Counted from the stretch's first letter, positions 4,879-64,000 are shown. The stretch: DNA of 64,000 bases from Kudoa neothunni (GCA_964304625.1 OZ199839.1:945616-1009615), one strand, 5' to 3'. Notes: generated by a model not told the origin, from the sequence alone. Made by a program: numbers and translations.

Positions 4879-7812
4879 ATGAAAAACACATATTTCAAAT
4901 TATGCATTCTAATTGGATTATTGTGTAATTTATATAAACCTGCTATATTTTATAACATTTTGTGTAGCTTTTAATGAATTTTATGCAAATGAAATAAAAG
5001 GTGTAACCTCAACTCCTACAAAAATACTTTCGTACAGCATTGCAAATGAAAAAGTTAAGCTGACATTGACTGGATCAGAATATGAACATGCCACAAAACA
5101 TTGTCTCATAAGAAAGGAGAATAATGATAGAACTGACTTTGATTCGATAAATTCCTGCACTACTAGTGGTTCAACCAGCGGAGGTAATCAATGCGTGCCT
5201 AAATGCTCTGCAAGCGACATCGAATTGGCGTTTAATTTGTTGTCACCCAGAGTCAATTTTATCTATGTTTATTCTGGGACAACCGCTGACGAAATAAAAG
5301 GAAAAAATTCTGGTGGTGACGTTTTTGGATTTTCTACTCGTAAGTTAAACGTAACATTATAATTTGTTGAACTAAAATTAGCATTATTGGTGAACCCAAT
5401 AATCGCAATAACGACAGATGCTACAACAGGCAAGTTAAAACTTGCAGCTAAAACGTGTAAAAATGTTGCCTGCCCTATTTTTTACAAGGGAATTAAATAC
5501 CAGGCTGGTACACAAGGGAATGACTGCGTCACTGAAAACAGCGCCAATACAGTGGATTTTGATTTGATGATTCCTCATTATGAGATGATATGTACGAATT
5601 ACCCTAGTTTCTTTTACGAAATGCCAAATTCCTACATGAAACAGAATATAGACATATACAAACCACAATACTACGTTACTTACAAGAAAGATGACAATGC
5701 AAAGAAAATATATGTTATAAAATTCACCAATGCTTTTCCTTCCGAAATATGCTTATTCAGTATCAAGAATGCTGCCAGTGGCGCAACTGCACCTACGAAA
5801 GATTACGCTTCGAATTGTGGAGGTGGGTCTCAAATTCCTTGTTACGCACCTTGTAATGACGTCGAGTTAACTCTCGCTGAATCCAAACCGATCGTCGAAA
5901 TATTAATTCAGACTAGAAACTGTAACTTGGGATTACCAGAAGGTAGTTTTAGGGGTTATGAAGAAAGAAAATATGGTAAAGTTTTAATTAAAAGGAAATA
6001 ATTTTTGATTAATTATAGCTATTGTTGAGCCTGCTGAAGCGAATAATGCACTATTTACTGCGGAAACAACTGTAGGAATAACACTTAATCCTTCTCCATA
6101 CGGCTCTTCCTCTAGTGATGTAAAATTCGACAGTTGCACGTTGAAATATTTCCTTGCTGGAAATTCCAGATATACTGGAGGAGCAGATACACAGTGCTCC
6201 AATAGTGACGGTTGTAAAACTAGTTGTGCGACAGCTTCTGTCATACAGGGACTGGGTGCAGGAAAAGCGTACATAATTGAAATTACGCCACAAACAATTA
6301 ATAATCACAATAACTTTAAGGAATATTTATTTTTCAGAACTAGTAATAAATTTTATAGTTTTATACTTTAATTATTCTTAGAAAAATCTGAAAATCTTAA
6401 CTTTGACGACGCTGTACCAACCGCGACCGACGTGACTGCTACAATCAAAGCGGTTGGCGGTAATATTGCAACAAATGCGAATGTAAATGAACCAACTTGC
6501 TCGTATTATCTAAGTATAGCAGAAAGAAACACATTCGTTGATGCAGAGTGTGAAGACAGCAATCCTTGCAGAGGGTTTTGCAAAGACACCAAAAAACTGA
6601 TAAATTTGGATCCCAAAACAAGTTACGATATTGAAGTTGTTTCACATAGAGACTATGGAAATAAAATATACAAAAATGTCTCGACTAGTAAAATAATTTA
6701 AACGTAACTAATCTAGCCTAAATTTTTTAGTTTCGTCAACCCTTGTTCTTTCCAAGAATTTCTTAGATAAAGGATTTCAAGTGGTTGGAACTTTGACCTC
6801 AGCCTATCCACAAGCGCTATGTCAATACAAAGTTAAAGTAAAAAATGGAACGACTTTAGAAGATATTTATTCTTGTCCATCCATTAATAATGTTGCTAAT
6901 CCTGCTACATCTCCCCAATCCCGAACAACGCAAGAATCTCAGTCGGTCAGCGGTTCAAATTTGTCTAAAATAAAAATAGCGAGAGCAAGTACTGAGGCAA
7001 ATAATAATAATACTCCAACAAACCAACCCACAACTACTGCTATTAATCAGTCCAACTTTCCACCGTGCAACAAGCCACCACTGTGCAGCAACATAGTAAT
7101 CAATGATGGATATGAGGCTGATAAAGTCTATCAAGTTTTGGTGACAGCCATAGGTCGATCTGAAGAAGTCACTATAGAAATTCCCAAAAGTAAAATATTC
7201 ATAGATCAACCAAGAGATTTTAAATATCAACTAAATATAGATTCTATTCCAGAATCGCCTCAGGATGAAAACAAAAAAATTACCGTAATTATTGAAAGAG
7301 TTGGCGAAACATTAAAAATCACCTCATTGCTTCCAAAAGAAAAGGATGAAAGATCAGTTTGTCGTTGGATACTAAGAGACATTACGCATGTTTCCCAACC
7401 AATAGTGAAAAAGTGTGAATCAATTGGCCCTAACAGATGTACTTTGCCTACTTGCAAATCGTTCACCATTGAGAACGTAAACGATACCAACGATTATCAT
7501 TTAACAGTCATTCACTCCATAGATTCCACTGTGAGTGGCGTTGGAATAATTAACAAAGGTAGCTTACAAGGAATAAATAAATTATATTTTAATTGTTATT
7601 TTAGGTGAGACTTCTAATCAATCGAAGTAAACTTTATTAATTTAAAATATTAAATAAAATTATTTATAGGGCGAGTACCTCAATGTATTATTTTTTTTAG
7701 TCAATTATGTTGTAATACTTAAAAATTTAGGATTATTGGGATAATTGTTCCAATTGCAATAGTTGTTTTAGGGATTGGATTTTATTTTGGTTATTGGAAA
7801 AATAGAGGATAA
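4879..7812 (+). CDS. Type-I membrane surface protein with ~7 cysteine-containing FN3-like modules (multi-exon)
   Basis: Signal-peptide exon MKNTYFKLCILIGLL|SFNEFYA (intron 4925-4967). Phase-1 GT-AG introns of ~40-50 nt at 5341-5381, 5976-6018, 6342-6381, 6688-6730 and 7190-7240 join the ORF-track pieces. FN3-like motifs GLGAGKAYIIEI and LDPKTSYDIEV. Final exon IIGIIVPIAIVVLGIGFYFGYWKNRG* (TM plus short tail), TAA 7810-7812. Confidence 0.82.
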
Positions 7813-53019: not shown

Positions 53020-55860
53020 GCTTAACTCTTCATAGCATCACCGGCTTTTCTCGCTAGTTGTTGATAGTTTTTTGGGAATATATTATTTGTTTTTGGAGCC
53101 AAACTGAAATCATTTCATTTTGTTAAATATTTGAAAATAGTTGAAAAACCGACCGACTGATTTATTTTGATATTTGTTGAGTTTATCAGCGTATGCTTGC
53201 ATTTTAGACTCTGGGCTAACAACCTGTGGAAAATGTTTTTTGGATGGAGCTGGTTGTGATGTTGAGAGGTGACATTGGATTAGAATTGGATTGGATTTTT
53301 GGATTACACTGTTGTGAATTTTAATGGGTTCTTGGAATTTGTTGGGATAATACTAGATTTGTAGAGTTATTTAATGTTGATAACAAGTGGTTTGTTAGAA
53401 TTTTTTGAATTTTTAGGTAATAGTTTCTTTGCATTGGTAAAATTTTTTTATATAGGAATTAACTTTTTAAGATGTTGGTATGTGCTGTTCATCAAATAAT
53501 TACAGAATTTTCCTCTACTACAGAATAGTAGAGGGTTTCTTTATTATGATTATGGCTGTGTCGAGATATATTTTGGTAGATAGTAGTAGACAATGTAAGT
53601 TGATGAATTTAGGTGTTCCTGTTGAATTAATTCCTGTTTAATAATAGTCACAGGGTTGTCCTCGTCGATTGATGTGTTTTAGGGTTTTTCGGGGGACAGG
53701 GGTGAATAACTTAAGTAGTTATTACATCCTCATCTTCAATGAGTTAATTAACGATAGTATTATTATTAATAGATTCTTCTAGAATAGCTATGTTCGATTC
53801 ATCCATTATTTCTACTACATCTGATTGGTTAGTTTATTAAAGCTGTATCTTTAAGAAATCTGCCACCATTAATGTGTCCATATCGTGAACAAACTTTGCG
53901 TGGTCATCATCAAACTACAGCATTTTGGCTGATTTTAAAAGTTTTGCATTAGTGGATGGATACATTATTTCCTCGATGTTAATTTCTTCTGGATTATATA
54001 TTGTTTGATCATTTGTGCTTTTAAGATTGTCTCACTTGAATTCTACCCCGATGGCGTCGTTAATTATAGCGATATTGTTGTCAATAAATTTAATTTCTTG
54101 AATGTAATTAATATTAATGATGTTAATATTATTTGAATTTATCTTTGAATTCTTGATGTTTTGAATATTGTTAACAAATTGGTCATTTGTTAGCTAATTA
54201 TGTTGGTTATTTGGAATGTGAAAATTAAATTGAGAGGTTGATGTGTATGTGCATTTATTAGAATTATTAATTTGATTTGTATGGTTTGTGTTGGTGTTTG
54301 ATTTTATAATGCTTCTTTTTTATTGTATAAGTGTACCAAGAAACCATGATTATTATTATTATTAAATTACGATTTTAATTATCATTCTCCGTTGATTGTG
54401 AAATAACATTAGTTGCGTTGACATATTATTCGTAATCGCATTGCGGTTGATTATTGGTAGATTATTCGAATGAACATAATTATGTAGAGTTCTAGATGAT
54501 TTAAAAATTGTGGTAATGTAAACATTAACGTTATTGACATGATCAACAGTTATATTGGTATCGTTACTATTAATGGAATGATTGTTGTTAATTGATAAAG
54601 ATGTAGGCGTATCATGTAGGTGTTGTTGATGTTGTTGACTTTGATGTTGATTTGCAATGGAAATGGAATTAGTAGAGTTAATGTGAATGAATAAGTCATG
54701 CAAGGATTATCATGTTGATTATTCATTACGTCTGTCAATAACGTTCAATGTAGGAATTATATTATTAGTGTTATCACCATTGATATTAGCATCGCAATGC
54801 ACTGTAGCTGTATTGTAAATTACTTTTTGATGGTCAGTTGAGTCAGCTGATTCAGTTTGTGGATTAGATGGATTTATGTTGAGAGATGAGATGATGTCGG
54901 AGAATTCGAAATTGATGGGTTCGAGTCGTTAGAGCATGCCGAATGCGTTAGATGTAAATTCAATGTATCATTTAGAAAGATGACAAGGTTCTCGCAATCA
55001 TACAATAGAAAGCCGTTGTCCGATTCTACTTCGGCGTGGGAGTCGCCTGATAAGTCCTATCAGCGTCGTTGTCAATGGTCAAGAGATAATTGTAATCCGC
55101 TAGCTCATTTCAGGTAATCTTATACGTTTCATTAGTAAGCAAATTAGTAGTGCTTTCTAACGATGTAGTGTGTGGTGCTTTGGAGGAATTGTCAATTGGA
55201 ATTTTGTTGTATAGATGAGAATGGTATTCCGTTGGTTGGATTGATATAGCCAAATTTAGTGGAATGGTGAGATTATCAGGGATTAAACCGATTTCCATAA
55301 AGTTGTCGGTTTTCTCATTCAGTTGGGCAATAATGGCATTTTTAAAGGCATCAGTGGATAGACCGTATCTTTGCTTTCGCTCAATACTCGTTTGGGAAGT
55401 TTTGGGCTACATCGATTTATGACCTTCCAAACCAACTTTAATGATGGCCTCATTTTCACTTCTGATTGTTCAATTGTTTCAATATTTGGACAAGCCAAGT
55501 CAAGTTTGTCTGTCGAAATACTCATCGATTGCATCATAAGCGTTTTCGCAATGCTTAGATGACGACAACTTTTCGGTGAAAAGTGACAGAACATTGAAAC
55601 AAAGTGATGTAATTTCGAACAAAGTCAGCCACACTTTTAACAGTTTGAGATAGTTTAGAACATGTCCATTTCATTTCTAAATAAATAGAATATAGATGGA
55701 AAATCATCGGCGAAAATTCGTGATAGAAATTCCTCATCACAGAAAGATCGCGTACTGATTTTAAAGGATCTTTGTAATCAGCGCATCATAATTGAACGAA
55801 TTGTAACAACATTTTTAATTTACGCTCCATACGAACGAAAAAATTTGTGCCTGCCAGGGG
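53020..55860 (-). pseudogene. Decayed copy C of the Asn-rich ORF family (probable 5' half of an RLE non-LTR element)
   Basis: HEFSPMIFHLYSIYLE...VADFVRNYITLF, MRPSLKLVWKVINR and GLIPDNLTIPLNLAISIQPTEY align with ORF 60356-61027. Ends in MQAYADKL...FSTIFKYLT and YQQLARKAGDAMKS. Confidence 0.65.
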
Positions 55861-55932: not shown

Positions 55933-55978
55933 TTATCTCATTTATGAATAACGAATTCGTTATTCATAAATGAGATAA
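55933..55978. repeat. Perfect 46-bp palindrome without spacer
   Basis: TTATCTCATTTATGAATAACGAA|TTCGTTATTCATAAATGAGATAA; the two arms are exact reverse complements. Confidence 0.95.
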
Positions 55979-57379: not shown

Positions 57380-58706
57380 TCTTACAGAATGGCCGTATCT
57401 AAATCTAAATTCGGCACGTCTTCAATCATGGCAAGTTCCGCATTCATTAATGCTTTCATATCATTATTGAATCTTGTGTGATCATCCACATTGATTTCGT
57501 TTGGATTGGCGTAGTTTCTTGTTTGAATTATTGTTGTTGTCTTCTTCCATCTCATGCCTAATTTCTTCAAGTTTTGGCCTATCTCTTACGTGATAAGACC
57601 ACCATTTAGTTTATTTGGAGTTTTTCAAACTGAAATTAACATTGGTTTCTCTGATTTCATTGTTATTGTTAAAAAATTAATTCCCCGATGGTTAATTATA
57701 TTGATATTAAAGTTGTTGGAATTTTGGTTTTTGTGGGTTCATTGTGTATTGTTATTAATTTGGTTTTTCACATATTATAGAGGTTGGTTAAACTGAATAT
57801 TATGTTGATCATTATGTTGGATATTTTGCTGTTGTGCTAAGTGTAAGGGGAGCCAGCACAGTTGTGTCTTATATTGAGATATTTTGTTGATGGGTGTTTG
57901 ATAATATAACACTTCTTTTGTATTGTTCATGAGCACCAAGAAAATTATCAATATGGTTAGAATTATTCTCCAGAGTTAATTGTTTCATTGGTATATTGGG
58001 ATTTGAATTTGGATTAGCATAGTTATGCATTAAAATAGGTGGGTTAATATTGTTATTCTCATTACATCATTAGCAAAATAATTGTTATTATTTATATTGG
58101 TTAATTGATGTTGATGTATTATTGGCATATTATTTGGGTTAGAATCAGCGTTATTAGATGATAATTGCGTGATGGGGATATCTGAGCTAGTAATTCTTTT
58201 ATTATTATTGTTAATGTCAATATCAACTGTTAGATATGGCAGTTAAATTATCATTGCAATGCACTGCATCGTTCGCGTTGTTGTAATCATAGTTTACATG
58301 GAATAGTTGTGGATTAGGATTATTGGATTAACATCCGGAGAAAACAAAATTGGTCAGTTCAAGTCATTTGAGGAAATTGAGTTGTTGGCCGATTCGTTAG
58401 ATTGTGAATTTAATGGATCATTCAACGAGATCACAATGTCATCACATTCATAAGTTGGAGATTGGTAAGAGTCGGGTGCTGACTCATCGACGTCGTTAGT
58501 GGATGCCAGCTCATCGTTCGATTTTGAGGAGACAATATTGTTGATAACGTTATCAGCACTTAACGATAGATTCGTCAACCACAGCATCAACAGTGGAGGA
58601 AATATTGGGATTTTTGGTAGGATTGAGTAATAATTATTTATGGTAGTATTCACTGTTGTATTCTGACGGAGAAATTGAAATTGCCAAAGTTAGAGGAATA
58701 ATCAGA
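57380..58706 (-). pseudogene. Decayed, 5'-truncated copy B of the Asn-rich ORF family
   Basis: NLIIPLTLAISISPSEYNSEYY and SADNVINN...NDELASTNDVDESAPDSYQSPTYECDDIVISLNDPLN are near-identical to 60117-60540. DHTRFNNDMKALMNAELAMIE matches DHARFRADIEALMDTDLAMIE. Confidence 0.75.
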
Positions 58707-61110
58707 TTATGGGGGATTAGCTGGTTGTTGGGAAGATTGAGAATTATTAGAGTGGATTTTAGTTTCACCGCTACTTTGGATGACAATGGGGTGATTTCTT
58801 GTTGTTGACATTAATTTGTTAATTTCCTGAGATAAAGATTGCGATTTAGATATTGGGTTGGGAGTTAATTTAAATTTAGATTCAGATTTAAGCGACTCTT
58901 CGACCTCAATAATCGAATTGTCCTCTAGCGCTGAATAGTAGAAAGTGTCTTCATAGTTGAGGTGAGTCCTAGGCGCGAAATATTGAGGAACATTAGGAGA
59001 TGGGTCGTAGTAGATGACAAGCGAAGAATCTGGTGATAATGAGTTGTCTGGTGAGCTTTGGACTTGCTCTATTAATTCACTCTTGATGTGAATAGAACTG
59101 TCACTATCGTTAAGTGTTGGAAGTGGGGAAGTAACTTTAGTGATTATCACGTCATCATCATCATCTTCATGATTAGGTGGATCTTCAAGAATTGCCAAAT
59201 CTAGGATATGAGCTGGATTGGGATTGTATTCGATCATAGCAAGATCTGTGTCCATTAAAGCTTCAATGTCAGCTCTAAATCTTGCATGGTCGCCTTCTAG
59301 ATTGTTTTTGATGGGGGCTAAATTAGAGGGTGCCAACATAATGTCCATTATGTCGATTTCTTCTGGATTGCCCACCTGATGATAATTACAATAATTATGG
59401 TTGTTAGAGTGTCCCTCTATTTCATCAATTATCCTTTCCAATTCTAGCCGATCTCTCTCGAAATCTGCCCACCATCTAGCATCTCTATAATTTTCCGCGC
59501 GGATTTTTGCATTATTATTGGAATTAATAACATTACGTTGAGCAAAATGTTGTTTATTAATATTATAAGTTGTTTGGTTGGAGTTGGAGGTAGGATTGGA
59601 TTGTTGTTTAAGGTCATTATCGTTGTTGGCATTGGCATGGGTGTGTGTGGACAGAACATTTTTCTTGTACTGCACTAATGCATCCATAAAGCCAAGATCA
59701 CTGTTGTTGTTTTGGGTGGTTGGCATAATATTTGGCATAATATTTAGTTCAGTTGACTTATATTTGGCTTAGTGACTTCCTCCGGGGAATTATGATTAGT
59801 GTTAGTGATAATGTTAGGGTTAGTATTAGAAATAACTATTGGACTAACATAATTGTGCATAGGAACCAACGATTTTGTTATAATTATCATTATCCACATA
59901 AACATCATTATTATGATTAGAATTATTAGAATTATCATTAGAAATATCAATAGTGGTTATTGGAGGTAAATTTGAACTGATATTATTGGATATTGATTGC
60001 GTGCGTGAGTTGAAGATTATCATAATTATCAGTAATTTCATCATTATCAATGATTGCAGTATTAAGTGGATCATTTGATATTGGATTACAACGCATTGAA
60101 ATATTGCAATCATAATTTACTTGTAATTGAAGTGTGGATTAGGATTATCAGTATTAGTATTAGTACTAATATCATCTGAAGAATTCAAAGTTGGTGGGTT
60201 CGAGTCAAATTGATTGGCCGATTCATCAGATTGTAAATTGAGAGGGTCATTCAGGGAGATGACAACATCATCACATTGATAAATTGGCGATTGGAAAGAG
60301 TCGGGTGCTGACTCATCAACGTCGTTAATGGATGCCAGCTCATTATTCGACTTTATTAAAGTGGCATTGGCGATAATGTTATCAGCACTGATAACAGATT
60401 CATCAACCACAGAGTCAACAGTATAGAGGAAACATTGGGATTTTGAAAGGGGTAAAGTGGCAACATTTTACGGTAATACTCACTGTTGTATTCCGACGGT
60501 TGGGTGGAAATGGCTTTGGTAATTGGAATAATAAGACTATCCGGGATTAACCCAGATATTATAAAATTTTCATTTTTAGCGTCCAATTCTTCAATTAGAG
60601 CACTTTTGAGTTGGTTGACAGCAAGCTTGTATCGTTCTTTACGTTCCAGTATGGCTTTTGGGATTTTTCGTGATGACCGGTTTAAGACCATCCAGATTAA
60701 CTTTAAAGATGCCTTTATTTTTAGCTGTTCCTCTACAGCTACAGACTCATCAATTTTATATGGTATAGCCAGTGTTGGGGGCGTTGTATAAAAGTAATTG
60801 TCAATGATATCAAATAGCTCTTTAGGGAGATCCTCCCTAGATAAGATACCAGAAAAGATCTTCAGAGATCCATGGAACAACGAAATATACTTCCTAACAA
60901 AGTCAGCAATACATTTATCAACAACAGATAGTTTAGCACCACTAAGGCGCTTCTCCAAATATGATGAGTAAAGGTGGTAAATTATCGGGGAAATTTCGTG
61001 CTCAAAATATTGTAACAAATCAGTCACACAAACTTCGCAATTGCACCGTTAGAATTGTTAGGTCATACACACCGCAACATGCATAAATTTTCCATTTCCG
61101 CTCCGAAAAA
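58707..61110 (-). pseudogene. Copy A of the Asn-rich ORF family (ORF pieces 60356-61027, 60117-60410, 58707-59738; frameshifted)
   Basis: Consecutive same-strand ORFs with no intron-like gaps, colinear with copies B and C. Confidence 0.7.
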
Positions 61111-61121
61111 ACGAAAAATTT

Positions 61122-61156
61122 CGCCTGGTAGGGGGCTCGAACCCATGGCCTCAAGT
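61122..61156 (-). other. tRNA 3'-half-like sequence (variable loop, T-arm/B-box, acceptor 3' strand; Lys-like G discriminator) followed by oligo-T
   Basis: Minus strand ACTTG-AGGCC-ATGGG-TTCGAGC-CCCCT-ACCAGGC-G, then AAATTTTT. The spacing fits tRNA positions 39-73 with one T-stem mismatch. No D-arm/A-box or acceptor 5' strand upstream. Confidence 0.7.
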
Positions 61157-64000
61157 ACACAAAAATAGCGGGAAAAATAGTGTTTGTAAACTAATCTAAT
61201 AAATGTTTATTTTGGGAAGGTGGAAGTTGGAATTGGGATGGTCCTTGATTGGTTGGATGATCTAAATAAAAATTAACAATTATTAAACAAGTTACGTGCG
61301 GTTTGGTGGAGAAGATTTCGTTTTCGCCACTCCCTGTAAGGGGGGTTGCGAAGACGGAATCTTGGGAGGTATCTTCATCGGCTTTTTGGATGGTTGGGAT
61401 AGTGGTTTTTGGATGGATTTCTTAATGGATTTTTTGCGCGATGAAGGTGGAGGTGGAGGCGCCAAAGTCATCACTGGGGTAGCTTTGATAACCATGGGTG
61501 GCGTCACAGATTTCTTCTTCTGGGGAGGTGGATTTTTAAAGATATCATCAGTTTGGGATAGAAACACTTGGGATGATTGGGAGTTTTGAGGAGAGTTGGA
61601 GGTGGGAATTTCAATTGTTGGGATGACTTGTTGGATAGTCTTGATGATATTGGTGGATTTGGTTGCTGGAGTGCGTTTTTTAGGCGCGTTTCGCAGCAGT
61701 GGTTTTTGGTTGTCCACATAGACACCATTTCTACAAATGGGTGTAGCGGAGGTTCCAAAGACATGGGCTCTCCAGATGGTCGAAGAGTCCAAGAGAACAG
61801 ATCTGGTGATTGCTTTCTTTAAGGCTGACACCCTCTTTTTGTTTTTAACAAAAAGAGCTTTATATACATCATTATTGGGCTCATAATGAGCCCCCAAAGA
61901 ACCGTAGATCAGCGCATAAAGTTGGCACGAGTAGCCCTTTTCCATCCATTGTGATTGCTCCTCCCTGTACTTGGCAACCTTGTGTTGGTGTACTTCTTCC
62001 AGGCGAGAGAGTGACGATTCGAAGGTGATGGAAACGTCGCAGATAATGACATCTTTGGTTTGGTCATTGAGGAGTACAATATCTGGTCGACGGTTAGAGG
62101 GGATCTGTGGGAAAATGGTGTCGAGGAATGTCACCCAATTCTTATTGGGCTTCATCTGTTCAGCGATGAGGTCAACAATATGGTTGTGTCGAGCGGACCT
62201 TGCTCTTTCACCGAACTTGCAGCCACCCAGAATATGTCCTAGGTGTTCCGTTGCCACATGGCAACGTCTACAGTCGGATTCAGAACAAAGTTTACGTATT
62301 TTCAATACGCACTTTGTGGGGAGCGCATTCACTCGCGCCAGGATGCCAAAGCGGTAGACATAGGGAGATACATCACCTTGGTTAATCCAGGAGTTTGCGA
62401 CTTTGCTTCCCACAAAACACTCAACGGATCGTCCCTGCATACGCTGAGACTTCCATACGTCGAGGAACATCGACTGAACATGCCACCGAATACGGCGTAC
62501 TCGGGTGGCACCTCGCTGTTGATGAGGGGGAATGTGTGGTGGCGGACTGAGGTAATCAGAGTCAATGTCAATCTTTGAGGGAGACTGTTCATCGGCTTGC
62601 TTGACTTGGAGTCCAAGAGACTTTGCATTCAAGCGGATGCTAGAGAAGATACTTCTCACGTCTCTGGACTTGATATACTCAGTGTCCCTGTTAAAATAGT
62701 CCTCAGGGGTGAGACTTTCGTTGGTTCTCTTACCAACGATGGATAAAATTGCGTCCTCAGACAGTTTGGCGACTCTTTCATCCGCGGAATGGATGAGGTT
62801 GAGTGCGGAGGCTAATCGGAGGGCACAAAAGTCGAGTTTAAGGCATCTCAGACCGAATCCCCCCACTGCACATGGAGTGTACAGTAGGGACTTTGTAACA
62901 GATTCGGGCATAGCTAACCAATGGCGAACTGATGACCGAATCTCAGAATCGATTTTCTTGAGGTCCTCGATGCGGATAATGTTATTCTTCATAGAATACT
63001 CAAGGGTGGGCATTAAGTAAGTTTTCGTGAGGTTAATCTTCATAAAGTGCAGTAGGGGAGCGTTTGAAACTTTTTGAAGGTTCTCACTAAACTTAGGGAA
63101 GCAAGGTGGCAGGTCTTTAAACGACTTTAGATTTTTACAGGTACCTAGGTACTTATAAAAATCCTCCATCAGCGGGATTGGCACACCTTGGAGAACATAT
63201 GGTTGGATTAATGTGGAATTTACAATGCGTGTTTTATTCTTAAATGTGACATTAAGTGTCGCACTCTTGGAATGGTTAATGCGCAGACCAAGATCATTAA
63301 TAAATGCTTCGAATTGATGGAGGAGGACATTCATTTGGATATTATTCTCGGTCAGCAACACAATGTCATCGGCATATGCCAACGCACCAAAAACCTGACC
63401 GTGAAGTTTATATCCCTGTTTTGAGTCATCAATTCGTCGCAAAAAGGGGTCCAAAACGAGGTTAAAAAGTAGGGGGGATAAGGGGCATCCCTGTCGTACA
63501 CCTTTACCATAAGGATAAAGGTAGCCAGTTCCGCCGCTCTTATCCGTAACCTCGTTGAAGCTGTTTGCGTACATATGTTTTAAGAGGTTGGTGATTTGAT
63601 GGGGGATATTAAAGTGGTTAAGTTGCTTTAATATCTCGGAATGGGGGACGGTATCGAAGGCCTTTTTCAGGTCTATCCAGACAGCTGATAGAGGGTTCTT
63701 CTCACGTCGTACGTCATCTAAAATTTCCTGGAGAATGAATGCGTGTTCAACGCATCCATTTCCACCGACGAATCCTTTTTGAGACGGGCTTAGTTCAACT
63801 AGGGAGGCGAGCTTTTTATTGACCACACTCATAAACAATCTGTAGATTGTTTGCGTAATAGAGATTGGTCTATACGCTGAGGGGTCCAACACATTAATTT
63901 CGCCGTCGGTCTTTGGCAGGAGTATGAGACGGCTAACAAGCCAATCATCAGGGACTCGCTCAGAATTAAGGATCCTGTTGAACAACTTTGCTAGATGAGA
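61157..64000 (-). mobile_element. RLE-type non-LTR retrotransposon (NeSL/Utopia/R2-like), 3' portion including ~135-nt 3' UTR
   Basis: Contains the RT-CCHC-RLE ORF. AATAAA in the 3' UTR at 61206-61211, no poly(A) tail. Clearly more GC-rich than its surroundings. Confidence 0.9.
61292..64000 (-). CDS. Reverse transcriptase + CCHC zinc knuckle + restriction-like endonuclease polyprotein (5' end outside window)
   Basis: YRPISI, QKGF, WIDLKKAFDTVPH, GVRQGCPLSPLLFN, LAYADDIVL, KYLG; CRRCHVATEHLGHILGGC; RHN, RPDIVL...ICDVSITFE, KVAKY. The frame stays open to the window edge. Confidence 0.97.
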   Translation of the reverse strand, partial: SHLAKLFNRILNSERVPDDWLVSRLILLPKTDGEINVLDPSAYRPISITQTIYRLFMSVVNKKLASLVELSPSQKGFVGGNGCVEHAFILQEILDDVRREKNPLSAVWIDLKKAFDTVPHSEILKQLNHFNIPHQITNLLKHMYANSFNEVTDKSGGTGYLYPYGKGVRQGCPLSPLLFNLVLDPFLRRIDDSKQGYKLHGQVFGALAYADDIVLLTENNIQMNVLLHQFEAFINDLGLRINHSKSATLNVTFKNKTRIVNSTLIQPYVLQGVPIPLMEDFYKYLGTCKNLKSFKDLPPCFPKFSENLQKVSNAPLLHFMKINLTKTYLMPTLEYSMKNNIIRIEDLKKIDSEIRSSVRHWLAMPESVTKSLLYTPCAVGGFGLRCLKLDFCALRLASALNLIHSADERVAKLSEDAILSIVGKRTNESLTPEDYFNRDTEYIKSRDVRSIFSSIRLNAKSLGLQVKQADEQSPSKIDIDSDYLSPPPHIPPHQQRGATRVRRIRWHVQSMFLDVWKSQRMQGRSVECFVGSKVANSWINQGDVSPYVYRFGILARVNALPTKCVLKIRKLCSESDCRRCHVATEHLGHILGGCKFGERARSARHNHIVDLIAEQMKPNKNWVTFLDTIFPQIPSNRRPDIVLLNDQTKDVIICDVSITFESSLSRLEEVHQHKVAKYREEQSQWMEKGYSCQLYALIYGSLGAHYEPNNDVYKALFVKNKKRVSALKKAITRSVLLDSSTIWRAHVFGTSATPICRNGVYVDNQKPLLRNAPKKRTPATKSTNIIKTIQQVIPTIEIPTSNSPQNSQSSQVFLSQTDDIFKNPPPQKKKSVTPPMVIKATPVMTLAPPPPPSSRKKSIKKSIQKPLSQPSKKPMKIPPKIPSSQPPLQGVAKTKSSPPNRT

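What the first reader, a model, noticed from the sequence alone, without database searches (positions are those of the whole stretch)
61080..61292. RLE retrotransposon ends at a tRNA 3' half that also heads the next element: possible self-regenerating tRNA target
Seen: on the minus strand the retroelement 3' UTR runs directly into a tRNA 3' half (61156-61122: AGGCC-ATGGG-TTCGAGC-CCCCT-ACCAGGC-G), then oligo-T and CG..GGAGCG.AAAT..AAAAT leading into ORF-family copy A. Copy C has a homologous head (55860-55810: CCCCTGGCAGGCA-CAAATTTTTTCGTTCGTATGGAGCGTAAATTAAAAAT), so the tRNA end travels with the 5' end of this family. Known: RLE non-LTR elements are often site-specific, and some NeSL-group elements (e.g. 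YURE in Ciona) target tRNA genes. Inference: if the element inserts near the anticodon loop and carries a replacement tRNA 3' half plus terminator at its own 5' end, each insertion rebuilds the tRNA, as phage attP sites do, and recreates the target. That would give exactly this head-to-tail stack of a young copy upstream of older decayed copies. A simpler alternative is two independent insertions, one in and one just downstream of a tRNA gene.
Basis: partly seen in the sequence, partly recalled or inferred. Interest (0 to 1): 0.85.

Follow-up and report, generated by a model that had tools for sequence, protein, structure and literature searches.

The report
Retrotransposons that rebuild their tRNA target
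The 35-base tRNA piece is a leftover 3' half of the genome's only tRNA-Lys(UUU) gene, sitting between two members of a head-to-tail stack of R2-like retrotransposons that insert at the anticodon loop yet leave a complete tRNA gene in front of them, which would let them colonise an essential single-copy gene.

Summary
Observation confirmed. Window 61122-61156 (-) matches positions 39-73 of a complete tRNA-Lys(UUU) gene 32 kb further on (C2:1038751-1038823), 34 of 35 bases.

On the minus strand the locus reads: intact tRNA, E1, half, E2, half, E2, half, E1, half, E1, half, then decayed E2-family copies A, B and C. The last E1 ends in this window. There is one 5' half and six 3' halves.

E1 is a 5.8-kb element. 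One copy has an uninterrupted 1881-codon frame with a reverse transcriptase and an R2-type restriction-like endonuclease.

The same architecture was read at tRNA-Lys(CUU), Gln(UUG), Thr(UGU) and Ser(AGA), and in a contig from another sample. In 17 of 20 RT-endonuclease loci a same-strand intact tRNA of a different anticodon lies 1.7-5 kb upstream.

The 5' halves of three target tRNAs each occur once in the 40-Mb genome.

So the target is rebuilt at each insertion. The terminator-bearing trailer, and probably the last bases of the acceptor stem, travel with the downstream element. Whether the core of the half is RNA-borne or a ~30-bp target-site duplication stays open.

tRNA-specific endonuclease-type elements and long duplications are already published, so this is a new variant. 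First-stage readers noted the same architecture elsewhere in this genome.

The parts
61295..64000 (-). C-terminal 902 codons of the E1a ORF (RT and restriction-like endonuclease). The frame continues beyond the window to an ATG at window-extended 66937, 1881 codons in all.
61292..61294 (-). stop codon of the E1a ORF
61157..61291 (-). E1a 3' UTR (135 nt). It has no poly(A) and ends precisely at the tRNA half in all three E1 copies.
61122..61156 (-). tRNA-Lys(UUU) 3' half, positions 39-73 (first base A instead of T39). It is a dead remnant of the target downstream of E1a.
61104..61121 (-). 18-nt trailer with two T-runs (Pol III terminator-like). It is the 5' end of the E2-family copy A.
58719..61103 (-). 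copy A: decayed 5' part of an E2-family element (N-terminal coding region only, no RT)
57512..58494 (-). copy B: short decayed E2-family fragment
55848..55860 (-). decayed last 13 nt of the tRNA (10/13 kept) at the head of copy C
53059..55847 (-). copy C: trailer plus decayed 5' part of an E2-family element (75% nt identity to E2 over 1.4 kb)

Best explanation
The 35-nt piece is the downstream remnant of the genome's single tRNA-Lys(UUU) gene, left behind by a site-specific R2-type non-LTR retrotransposon (E1: reverse transcriptase plus restriction-like endonuclease).

Two deeply diverged families, E1 and E2, prime reverse transcription from a nick at the 3' edge of the anticodon loop. E2 nicks at 38/39 and E1 one base further on.

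Each insertion duplicates the tRNA 3' half. A complete tRNA with a Pol III terminator is left upstream of the new element, and a dead half is left downstream. Repeated insertion into the rebuilt gene stacks elements head to tail, each separated by a half.

The terminator-bearing trailer, and probably the last few bases of the acceptor stem, belong to the 5' end of the incoming element. The core of the half (about positions 37-65) comes either from a ~30-bp staggered-nick target-site duplication or from an RNA-borne copy that guides 5' joining by homology.

Shown: the architecture, the element's enzymes, the single-copy status of the target, and the recurrence at many tRNAs. Inferred: target-primed reverse transcription, the order of insertions, and which bases are carried.
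For: 1. Array structure. Six identical 3' halves and one 5' half occur on one strand. The units are E1 (3 copies, 99.4-99.8% identical) and E2 (2 copies, about 99.3-99.7%), interleaved, followed by decayed E2-family copies.

2. Enzymes. E1 has RVT_1 (E = 7e-37), a CCHC motif and an RHN..PD..D..K endonuclease motif. Residues 944-1731 align to solved R2 proteins through their C-terminus (E about 1e-81).

3. Other tRNAs. The same architecture was read base by base at tRNA-Lys(CUU), Gln(UUG), Thr(UGU) and Ser(AGA). It was also read in a contig from another sample.

4. Genome-wide association. 17 of 20 RT-endonuclease loci have a same-strand intact tRNA of a different anticodon 1.7-5 kb upstream of the RT region. 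About 0.05 would be expected by chance. Most of these heads carry the shared N-terminal ORF, and six control tRNAs do not.

5. Single-copy targets. The 5' halves of tRNA-Lys(UUU), Gln(UUG) and Lys(CUU) each occur once in 40 Mb at up to 3 mismatches.

6. Trailer belongs to the element.
- In the Lys array the A3/T5 trailer always precedes E1 (3 of 3) and the A4/T6 trailer always precedes E2 (2 of 2), whatever lies upstream.
- In the Gln array a quite different trailer type occurs twice.
- The E1 and E2 5' UTRs stay alignable beyond the 18-nt trailer, with no sharp duplication boundary.

7. Acceptor end. All 5-6 variants in 16 young halves fall in the last 8 nt, about (8/35)^5 = 6e-4 under uniformity. 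The two Gln variants go with the odd trailer and turn T-G wobbles into T-A pairs, so they would still give a working acceptor stem.

8. Independent reads. Short-read unitigs of a DNA run reproduce the junctions, with depths close to the assembled copy numbers.
Against: - No RNA evidence: three RNA runs gave zero reads on the element, which is no test.
- No empty site, no polymorphic insertion and no intact array tail could be examined.
- The halves of all young Lys copies are identical, so that array cannot say where the half comes from.
- The co-variation counts are small (5 junctions in Lys, 2 variant junctions in Gln).
- T-run and A-run lengths mutate easily.
- Neighbouring same-family copies (E1a/E1b, E2a/E2b) could have arisen by unequal crossing-over between halves rather than by re-insertion.
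- E2's source copy is not evident if insertion occurs only at the head.
- Three arrays contain 200-N assembly gaps, so copy numbers are uncertain.
Confidence: 0.75

Rival explanations
1. The whole tRNA 3' half plus terminator is part of the element RNA's 5' end. Both nicks fall at the same place, and the rebuilt tRNA is a chimera of a host 5' half and a transposon 3' half.
For: - The trailer and the acceptor-end variants travel with the downstream element.
- In E1 the only in-frame ATG before codon 108 lies in the T arm, in a GCCATGG context. The frame is open from that ATG in E1, E2 and the Lys(CUU) relative, while the ancestral CTAACGATG start is out of frame in all three.
- Copy C keeps a tRNA end at its head.
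Against: - Variants in young halves are confined to the last 8 nt, and the other ~27 nt never vary. That pattern is expected if the core is copied from the target each time.
- Two of the three reading frames through the half are stop-free anyway, and the T/A-run trailer cannot encode stops, so the open frame is weak evidence.
- No mechanism is known that would give an RNA 5' end exactly at the nick. No ribozyme was found.
Confidence: 0.3
2. Pure long target-site duplication. Staggered nicks about 53 bp or more apart copy the half and the native trailer, and the element carries no tRNA-derived sequence.
For: - Long duplications are known for endonuclease-type elements: R9 has an 'exceptionally long' one (Gladyshev and Arkhipova 2009, cited in PMC5035012), and reptile Utopia has 20 bp.
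- The LIN15_SM junction rows in S6 Fig of PMC4640811 show the tRNA running almost to its end on the 5' side and restarting in the anticodon arm on the 3' side.
- All young Lys halves are identical.
Against: - Trailer variants follow the downstream element family. Serial duplication would need about 5 exactly reverting indels in the Lys array.
- Two very different trailer types coexist in the Gln array, and in the other-sample contig.
- Related families at different isoacceptor genes share similar trailers: Val-CAC with Val-AAC, and Lys-UUU with Lys-CUU.
Confidence: 0.08
3. The elements insert immediately downstream of the tRNA, at the discriminator/trailer boundary, and carry a partial tRNA copy as their own 3' terminal module. 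The tRNA is never interrupted.
For: Any cyclic permutation of the unit (half, trailer, body) gives the same array. The first base of each half co-varies with the upstream family: A after E1 and T after E2.
Against: - The acceptor-end variants in the Gln array go with the downstream trailer and differ between near-identical upstream copies.
- In target-primed reverse transcription, the sequence after an element's 3' end is the target.
- Published tRNA-specific relatives have their 3' junction in the anticodon arm.
Confidence: 0.07
4. There is no serial targeting. Either two unrelated insertions lie in and beside a tRNA gene, or one insertion was amplified by unequal crossing-over, segmental duplication or mis-assembly.
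For: - Same-family neighbours are 99.7-99.8% identical.
- A 13.4-kb duplication and 200-N gaps lie inside arrays.
Against: - Families are interleaved (E1, E2, E2, E1, E1, then old E2-like), which needs several independent insertions at the same site.
- The pattern recurs at 17 tRNAs and in another sample.
- Read-derived unitigs reproduce every junction type.
Confidence: 0.05

Closest known systems
R2 (28S rDNA-specific non-LTR retrotransposons with a restriction-like endonuclease)
   Same: Single ORF with a central RT and a C-terminal CCHC plus PD-(D/E)xK endonuclease. The best solved-structure matches are R2 proteins, aligned through the endonuclease. Also shared: strict site specificity, a precise 3' junction and no poly(A).
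   Different: The target is a tRNA gene, not 28S. Pfam finds no N-terminal zinc finger or Myb domain; instead there is about 940 aa of unknown N-terminal sequence with a family-wide N-terminal motif. R2 inactivates the rDNA unit it enters, whereas here the target gene is left complete. No 5' ribozyme was detected.
Published tRNA-gene-specific endonuclease-type families NeSL-1_TV (tRNA-Pro), LIN15_SM (tRNA-Arg) and LIN25_SM (tRNA-Glu) (Kojima and Jurka 2015, PMC4640811)
   Same: Endonuclease-type non-LTR elements inserted inside tRNA genes. The LIN15_SM junction rows show a 3' junction in the anticodon arm and a 5' junction near the tRNA 3' end, meaning a long duplication of the 3' half.
   Different: - In that LIN15_SM row the 5'-side tRNA stops short of its 3' end. 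Here the duplication runs through the discriminator and is followed by a terminator.
- At least 17 anticodons are colonised in one 40-Mb genome.
- Three tested targets are single-copy.
- Arrays hold interleaved families.
- Relatedness of the RT to those families was not tested.
R9 of bdelloid rotifers and other long-duplication endonuclease-type elements
   Same: A long direct repeat of target sequence flanks the element (R9 is cited in PMC5035012).
   Different: In R9 the repeat is 28S sequence. The 126-bp length is from memory and was not checked here. In the present case part of the repeat, the trailer and probably the acceptor end, tracks the element and not the site.
Prokaryotic integrative elements with attP in a tRNA 3' end (phages, ICEs)
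   Same: By analogy only: the incoming element brings a replacement tRNA 3' end, so the gene stays functional and the site can be used again.
   Different: Those use a tyrosine or serine recombinase on DNA. Here an RT and an endonuclease act through an RNA intermediate, and no integrase was found by Pfam.
Pol III-gene-associated retroelements (Dictyostelium TRE, yeast Ty3) and Dada DNA transposons
   Same: tRNA genes serve as landing sites. Dada inserts inside small-RNA genes (PMC3706591 and PMC8869645).
   Different: TRE and Ty3 land beside tRNA genes by tethering to Pol III factors and are not specific for one tRNA (from memory). Dada is a DNA transposon. Here each family is found at a single tRNA species.

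Membership tests
Non-LTR retrotransposon with restriction-like endonuclease (RLE type) | Reverse transcriptase domain of the non-LTR type | tested here: met
   Pfam RVT_1 E = 6.6e-37, residues 1008-1229. PDB matches are R2 and LINE-1 ORF2 proteins.
Non-LTR retrotransposon with restriction-like endonuclease (RLE type) | C-terminal CCHC motif followed by a PD-(D/E)xK nuclease motif, with no APE domain | tested here: met
   CCHC at residue 1556. RHN, RRPD, D-V and K..KY motifs at about 1600-1690. The alignment to R2 chains runs to their C-terminus. No PF03372 hit.
Non-LTR retrotransposon with restriction-like endonuclease (RLE type) | Site-specific insertion with a constant 3' junction | tested here: met
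   All three E1 copies and both E2 copies end at the same tRNA position, each family at its own base.
R2 clade in the strict sense | N-terminal zinc finger(s) and a Myb DNA-binding domain | tested here: not met
   Pfam scan of the 1881-aa protein at E up to 1 found none. Structure-based detection was not tried.
R2 clade in the strict sense | Insertion in the conserved 28S rRNA gene site | tested here: not met
   All copies lie in a tRNA-Lys(UUU) gene.
NeSL clade (nematode NeSL / Utopia) | Placement in the RT phylogeny; Ulp1-like protease in nematode NeSL | tested here: inconclusive
   No protease domain by Pfam. Relatives at 28% identity include both Myb/ZF-bearing R2-like proteins and a U2-associated Utopia-like element. 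No tree with named references could be built.
tRNA-gene-specific RLE elements (NeSL-1_TV, LIN15_SM, LIN25_SM) | Insertion inside a tRNA gene at a fixed position | tested here: met
   Junctions fall at tRNA positions 35-40 in five families read base by base.
Long target-site-duplication elements (R9 type) | The direct repeat flanking the element is made from the target by staggered nicks | not testable with these tools
   A repeat of the 3' half is present, but its origin (target versus RNA) cannot be read from arrays alone. Trailer co-variation argues against a pure duplication.
attP-type tRNA-regenerating integrative elements | Site-specific recombinase | tested here: not met
   Only RT and endonuclease were found. 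This is an analogy of outcome, not membership.

The most novel reading that the evidence does not exclude
A radiation of R2-type retrotransposons has colonised at least 17 different tRNA genes of a 40-Mb genome, and the three tested are single-copy. The elements bring their own replacement tRNA 3' end and Pol III terminator. The host's working tRNAs would then be chimeras of a host 5' part and a transposon-supplied 3' end, and purifying selection on the host tRNA would maintain the transposon's 5' end. In the Lys-specific families the element's start codon lies inside the tRNA T arm.
Probability: 0.45. Interest if true: 0.88.

Novelty: new variant of a known kind. Interest (0 to 1): 0.77.

Why it matters
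Site-specific retrotransposons are thought to survive by hitting multicopy genes, where a dead copy costs little.

Here the targets tested are single-copy tRNA genes, which should be essential. That is only tolerable if every insertion restores the gene. This would be a retroelement counterpart of the phage attP/tRNA strategy, reached through a different mechanism.

Several things follow:
- It ties the fitness of the element's 5' end to the function of a host tRNA.
- It gives natural chronological stacks for dating insertions.
- It shows one protein scaffold retargeted to many different ~70-bp sequences, which is of interest for work on retargeting R2-type insertion systems. A 2026 review of R2 diversity does not mention tRNA targets (PMC13580325).

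Tried and rejected
- RNA evidence. The three RNA runs carrying the same organism label gave zero reads on a 5,991-letter stretch, which is no test.
- Ribozyme at the 5' end. Rfam at permissive thresholds found only tRNAs and noise in the window's 50-64 kb and in 14 element heads.
- Array tails and solo insertions (Trp, Asn, Phe, Cys loci).
- Pairwise BLASTP of the E1 N-terminus against the copy A ORF was not significant. Only a profile comparison gave a weak match.
- Organism identity. A protein-atlas look-up of a host ORF was blank.
- More distant protein relatives. Contigs L081, L082 and L083 showed no tRNA, and L084 is U2-associated, so they do not extend the tRNA-targeting group.
- A trailer hairpin as a general feature. 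It is present only in the Lys and Asn families and is not general.
- Literature. Searches for a described tRNA-regenerating non-LTR element found none.

Full report
**Coordinates.** The window is G000:C2:945616-1009615. "Extended" coordinates continue the window numbering beyond 64000 using loci L007-L011.

**1.
- On the minus strand, the stop codon of a long ORF lies at 61292-61294. It is followed by a 135-nt 3' UTR (61157-61291) and then 35 nt (61122-61156) with the form of a tRNA 3' half.
- The ORF carries an RT domain.
- ARAGORN finds no whole tRNA in the window.
- The same 35 nt, apart from the first base, are positions 39-73 of a complete tRNA-Lys(UUU) gene at extended 93136-93208 = C2:1038751-1038823 (ARAGORN; Infernal 66.5 bits).
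- After the half come 18 nt with two T-runs and then the head of copy A.
- Copy C's head keeps 10 of the last 13 tRNA bases and a homologous trailer.

**2. The locus is a stack.** The core of the half occurs six times, only here in the genome. Read along the minus strand, the order is:
- complete tRNA
- E1c
- half
- E2b
- half
- E2a
- half
- E1b
- half
- E1a
- half (the finding)
- copy A
- copy B
- copy C

Further details of the stack:
- There is a single 5' half.
- The E1 copies are 5.76 kb and 99.4-99.8% identical. The E2 copies are about 99.3-99.7% identical. E1 and E2 share no nucleotide similarity at E = 1e-20 and 45% amino-acid identity in the RT-endonuclease region.
- E2 ends before T39 of the tRNA. 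E1 ends one base later and shows an A there.
- Copies A-C are E2-family 5' parts without an RT, decayed and rearranged.
- Unitigs of a DNA run reproduce all junction types. Depths are roughly proportional to the assembled copy numbers: E1 12.6, E2 3' end 7.4, copy A 5, half 25. That run may be the assembly's own sample.

**3. The element.**
- E1a has one uninterrupted frame of 1881 codons, running from extended 66937 to 61295. E1b and E1c carry frame disruptions.
- It has RVT_1 at residues 1008-1229, a CCHC motif at 1556, and RHN, PD, D and K..KY motifs.
- Residues 944-1731 align to solved R2 proteins (9nl3, 9dou) through the endonuclease at E about 1e-81.
- Pfam sees nothing in the first 940 residues.
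- A short N-terminal motif is shared by all families. E1 matches it only weakly (hhalign E = 0.011; pairwise BLASTP against copy A is not significant).

**4. It is a genome-wide system.**
- A protein search with the RT-endonuclease region finds about 20 loci, many of them arrays.
- An incomplete tRNA listing of 38 genes, with ARAGORN typing, puts a same-strand intact tRNA 1.7-5 kb upstream of the RT region at 17 of them. About 0.05 would be expected by chance.
- Each of the 17 tRNAs has a different anticodon: Lys-UUU, Lys-CUU, Gln-UUG, Gln-CUG, Thr-UGU, Thr-AGU, Cys, Phe, Asn, Val-CAC, Val-AAC, Ile, Ser-AGA, Gly-UCC, Met, Arg-ACG and Trp.
- Most heads have the shared N-terminal ORF starting 50-170 nt after the tRNA end, and six control tRNAs do not.
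- Internal junctions were read at Lys-CUU, Gln-UUG (eight internal junctions), Thr-UGU and Ser-AGA. Each time an element's 3' end abuts the local tRNA's 3' half, starting at positions 35-40, followed by a trailer and the next head.
- The Lys-CUU array also mixes an E1-like and an E2-like lineage.
- The closest public proteins (48% identity) come from one ENA sample. Its 5.9-kb contig begins and ends its element with a tRNA-Gln-type half followed by a second head.

**5. The tested targets are single-copy.** The 5' halves of tRNA-Lys(UUU), Gln(UUG) and Lys(CUU) each occur once at up to 3 mismatches. A looser anticodon-arm pattern finds no other plausible Lys(UUU) gene. By inference, the rebuilt head genes must be the working ones.

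**6. What is carried by the element?**
- In the Lys array the trailer has three As and a five-T second run before every E1 (3 of 3). It has four As and a six-T second run before every E2 (2 of 2), regardless of what lies upstream. Serial copying of the resident site would need about five exactly reverting indels.
- The E1 and E2 5' UTRs remain alignable past the 18-nt trailer, with a 10-nt insertion in E1. So there is no sharp duplication boundary.
- In the Gln array a very different trailer type occurs twice. Both times the acceptor 3' strand is changed (ACGGCC to ACAACC or ACGACC). These changes convert T-G wobbles into T-A pairs and so preserve the stem.
- Across 16 young halves, every variant lies in the last 8 nt. 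These are the Gln changes, a Lys-CUU discriminator change, a 4-nt duplication in Thr-UGU, and the discriminator in the other-sample contig. None lies in the other ~27 nt. The chance of that is about 6e-4 under uniformity.
- The simplest reading is mixed. The trailer and the acceptor end come with the element. The core of the half is copied from the target by a ~30-bp stagger, or it is RNA-borne and continually purified because a faulty half would ruin an essential gene.
- A terminally redundant RNA (half at the 5' end, plus read-through into the next half at the 3' end) would allow homology-guided joining at both ends. This is inference only.

**7. Rivals.**
- Pure duplication including the trailer is disfavoured by the co-variation.
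- Insertion just behind the tRNA, with the half as a 3' module of the upstream element, is disfavoured by the Gln variants and by the logic of target-primed reverse transcription.
- Two chance insertions, or amplification alone, are excluded by the interleaved families and the recurrence.
- Unequal crossing-over may still explain same-family neighbours.

**8. Literature.**
- Endonuclease-type families specific for tRNA-Pro, tRNA-Arg and tRNA-Glu are published. YURE is reported to prefer U2-derived satellites (PMC4640811).
- The LIN15_SM junction rows in that paper's supplement show a comparable long overlap that stops short of the tRNA end.
- R9 is cited for an exceptionally long duplication.
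- I found no description of complete tRNA-plus-terminator regeneration, of single-copy targets, or of such a radiation.
- Other first-stage readers of this scan noted the same architecture at neighbouring and distant places of this genome. These are unchecked notes, and I reached the loci independently.

**9. Limits.**
- There is no RNA evidence.
- No empty sites or intact array tails were seen.
- Arrays contain 200-N gaps.
- The clade within the endonuclease-type elements is unresolved.

Noticed in passing
L007:6935-6937 (-), i.e. extended 66935-66937; the same position in E1b, E1c, E2 and the Lys(CUU) relative: The T arm of both Lys tRNAs contains an ATG (GCCATGG in Lys-UUU, where it coincides with a U50-C64 mismatch in the T stem). 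In E1 it is the only in-frame ATG before codon 108. The start motif conserved in other families (CTAACGATG) is out of frame in all three Lys-specific lineages.
   Followed up: partly
Heads L059-L072, 50-110 nt after each tRNA end: A motif close to GAATCTAACGATGC is conserved across deeply diverged families. In several of them (Cys, Ser, Gly-UCC, Val-AAC) its ATG opens the ORF.
   Followed up: partly
L007:6860-6912 (-), L008:9100-9148 (-), L051:5860-5897 (-), L062:134-180 (+): In the Lys and Asn families the terminator T-runs pair with a downstream A-rich complement to form a hairpin right after the tRNA end (Asn z = -5.3, E1 z = -2.0). It is absent in most other families and in control tRNA trailers.
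   Followed up: partly
L053:2541-2575 (+) and L079:120-155, 5155-5190 (+): The Gln-specific families have an intron-like or trans-splice-acceptor-like segment (GTAAGTT ... CTAA(C/T)TTTTTAG) directly before the ATG. It is conserved in the contig from another sample.
   Followed up: no
window 55933-55978: A perfect 46-nt palindrome (two 23-nt arms, no spacer) lies in the unassigned 1.6 kb between copy B and the head of copy C.
   Followed up: no
E2a nt 1524-1640 (L008, about 7510-7625, -): This segment of E2 matches short tandem repeats at many loci, for example C3:10980662-10981141, C3:8997332-8998795 and C1:16054519-16055171 (77-87% identity). Either it is a satellite related to an E2 coding segment, or it is low-complexity Asn-rich sequence.
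   Followed up: no
Extended 84365-84564; C3:3361431-3361630; C2:7586966-7587165: 200-N gaps sit inside three arrays. E2b's apparent 1.5-kb internal duplication flanks one of them, and a 13.4-kb 99.7% duplication flanks another. Array copy numbers are therefore uncertain.
   Followed up: partly
All junctions read: Insertion points fall at tRNA positions 35-40, around the canonical tRNA intron position 37/38, and always in the tRNA's own orientation. Whether this is meaningful is unknown.
   Followed up: no
L084:132-245: A TARA metagenome scaffold encoding a 28%-identical relative (P0005) has a U2 snRNA match directly upstream, so it is probably a Utopia-type element.
   Followed up: no
L082:1-100 and 6373-6471: A metagenomic contig encoding a 1948-aa relative (P0019) has the same ~100 nt at both ends, from a tandem or circular assembly. 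No tRNA was recognised.
   Followed up: no
Whole genome G000: There are three large contigs (17.15, 12.04 and 11.05 Mb) plus one of about 18 kb. The window is 30% GC. From memory, this resembles a small nematode genome; that guess is unverified.
   Followed up: no
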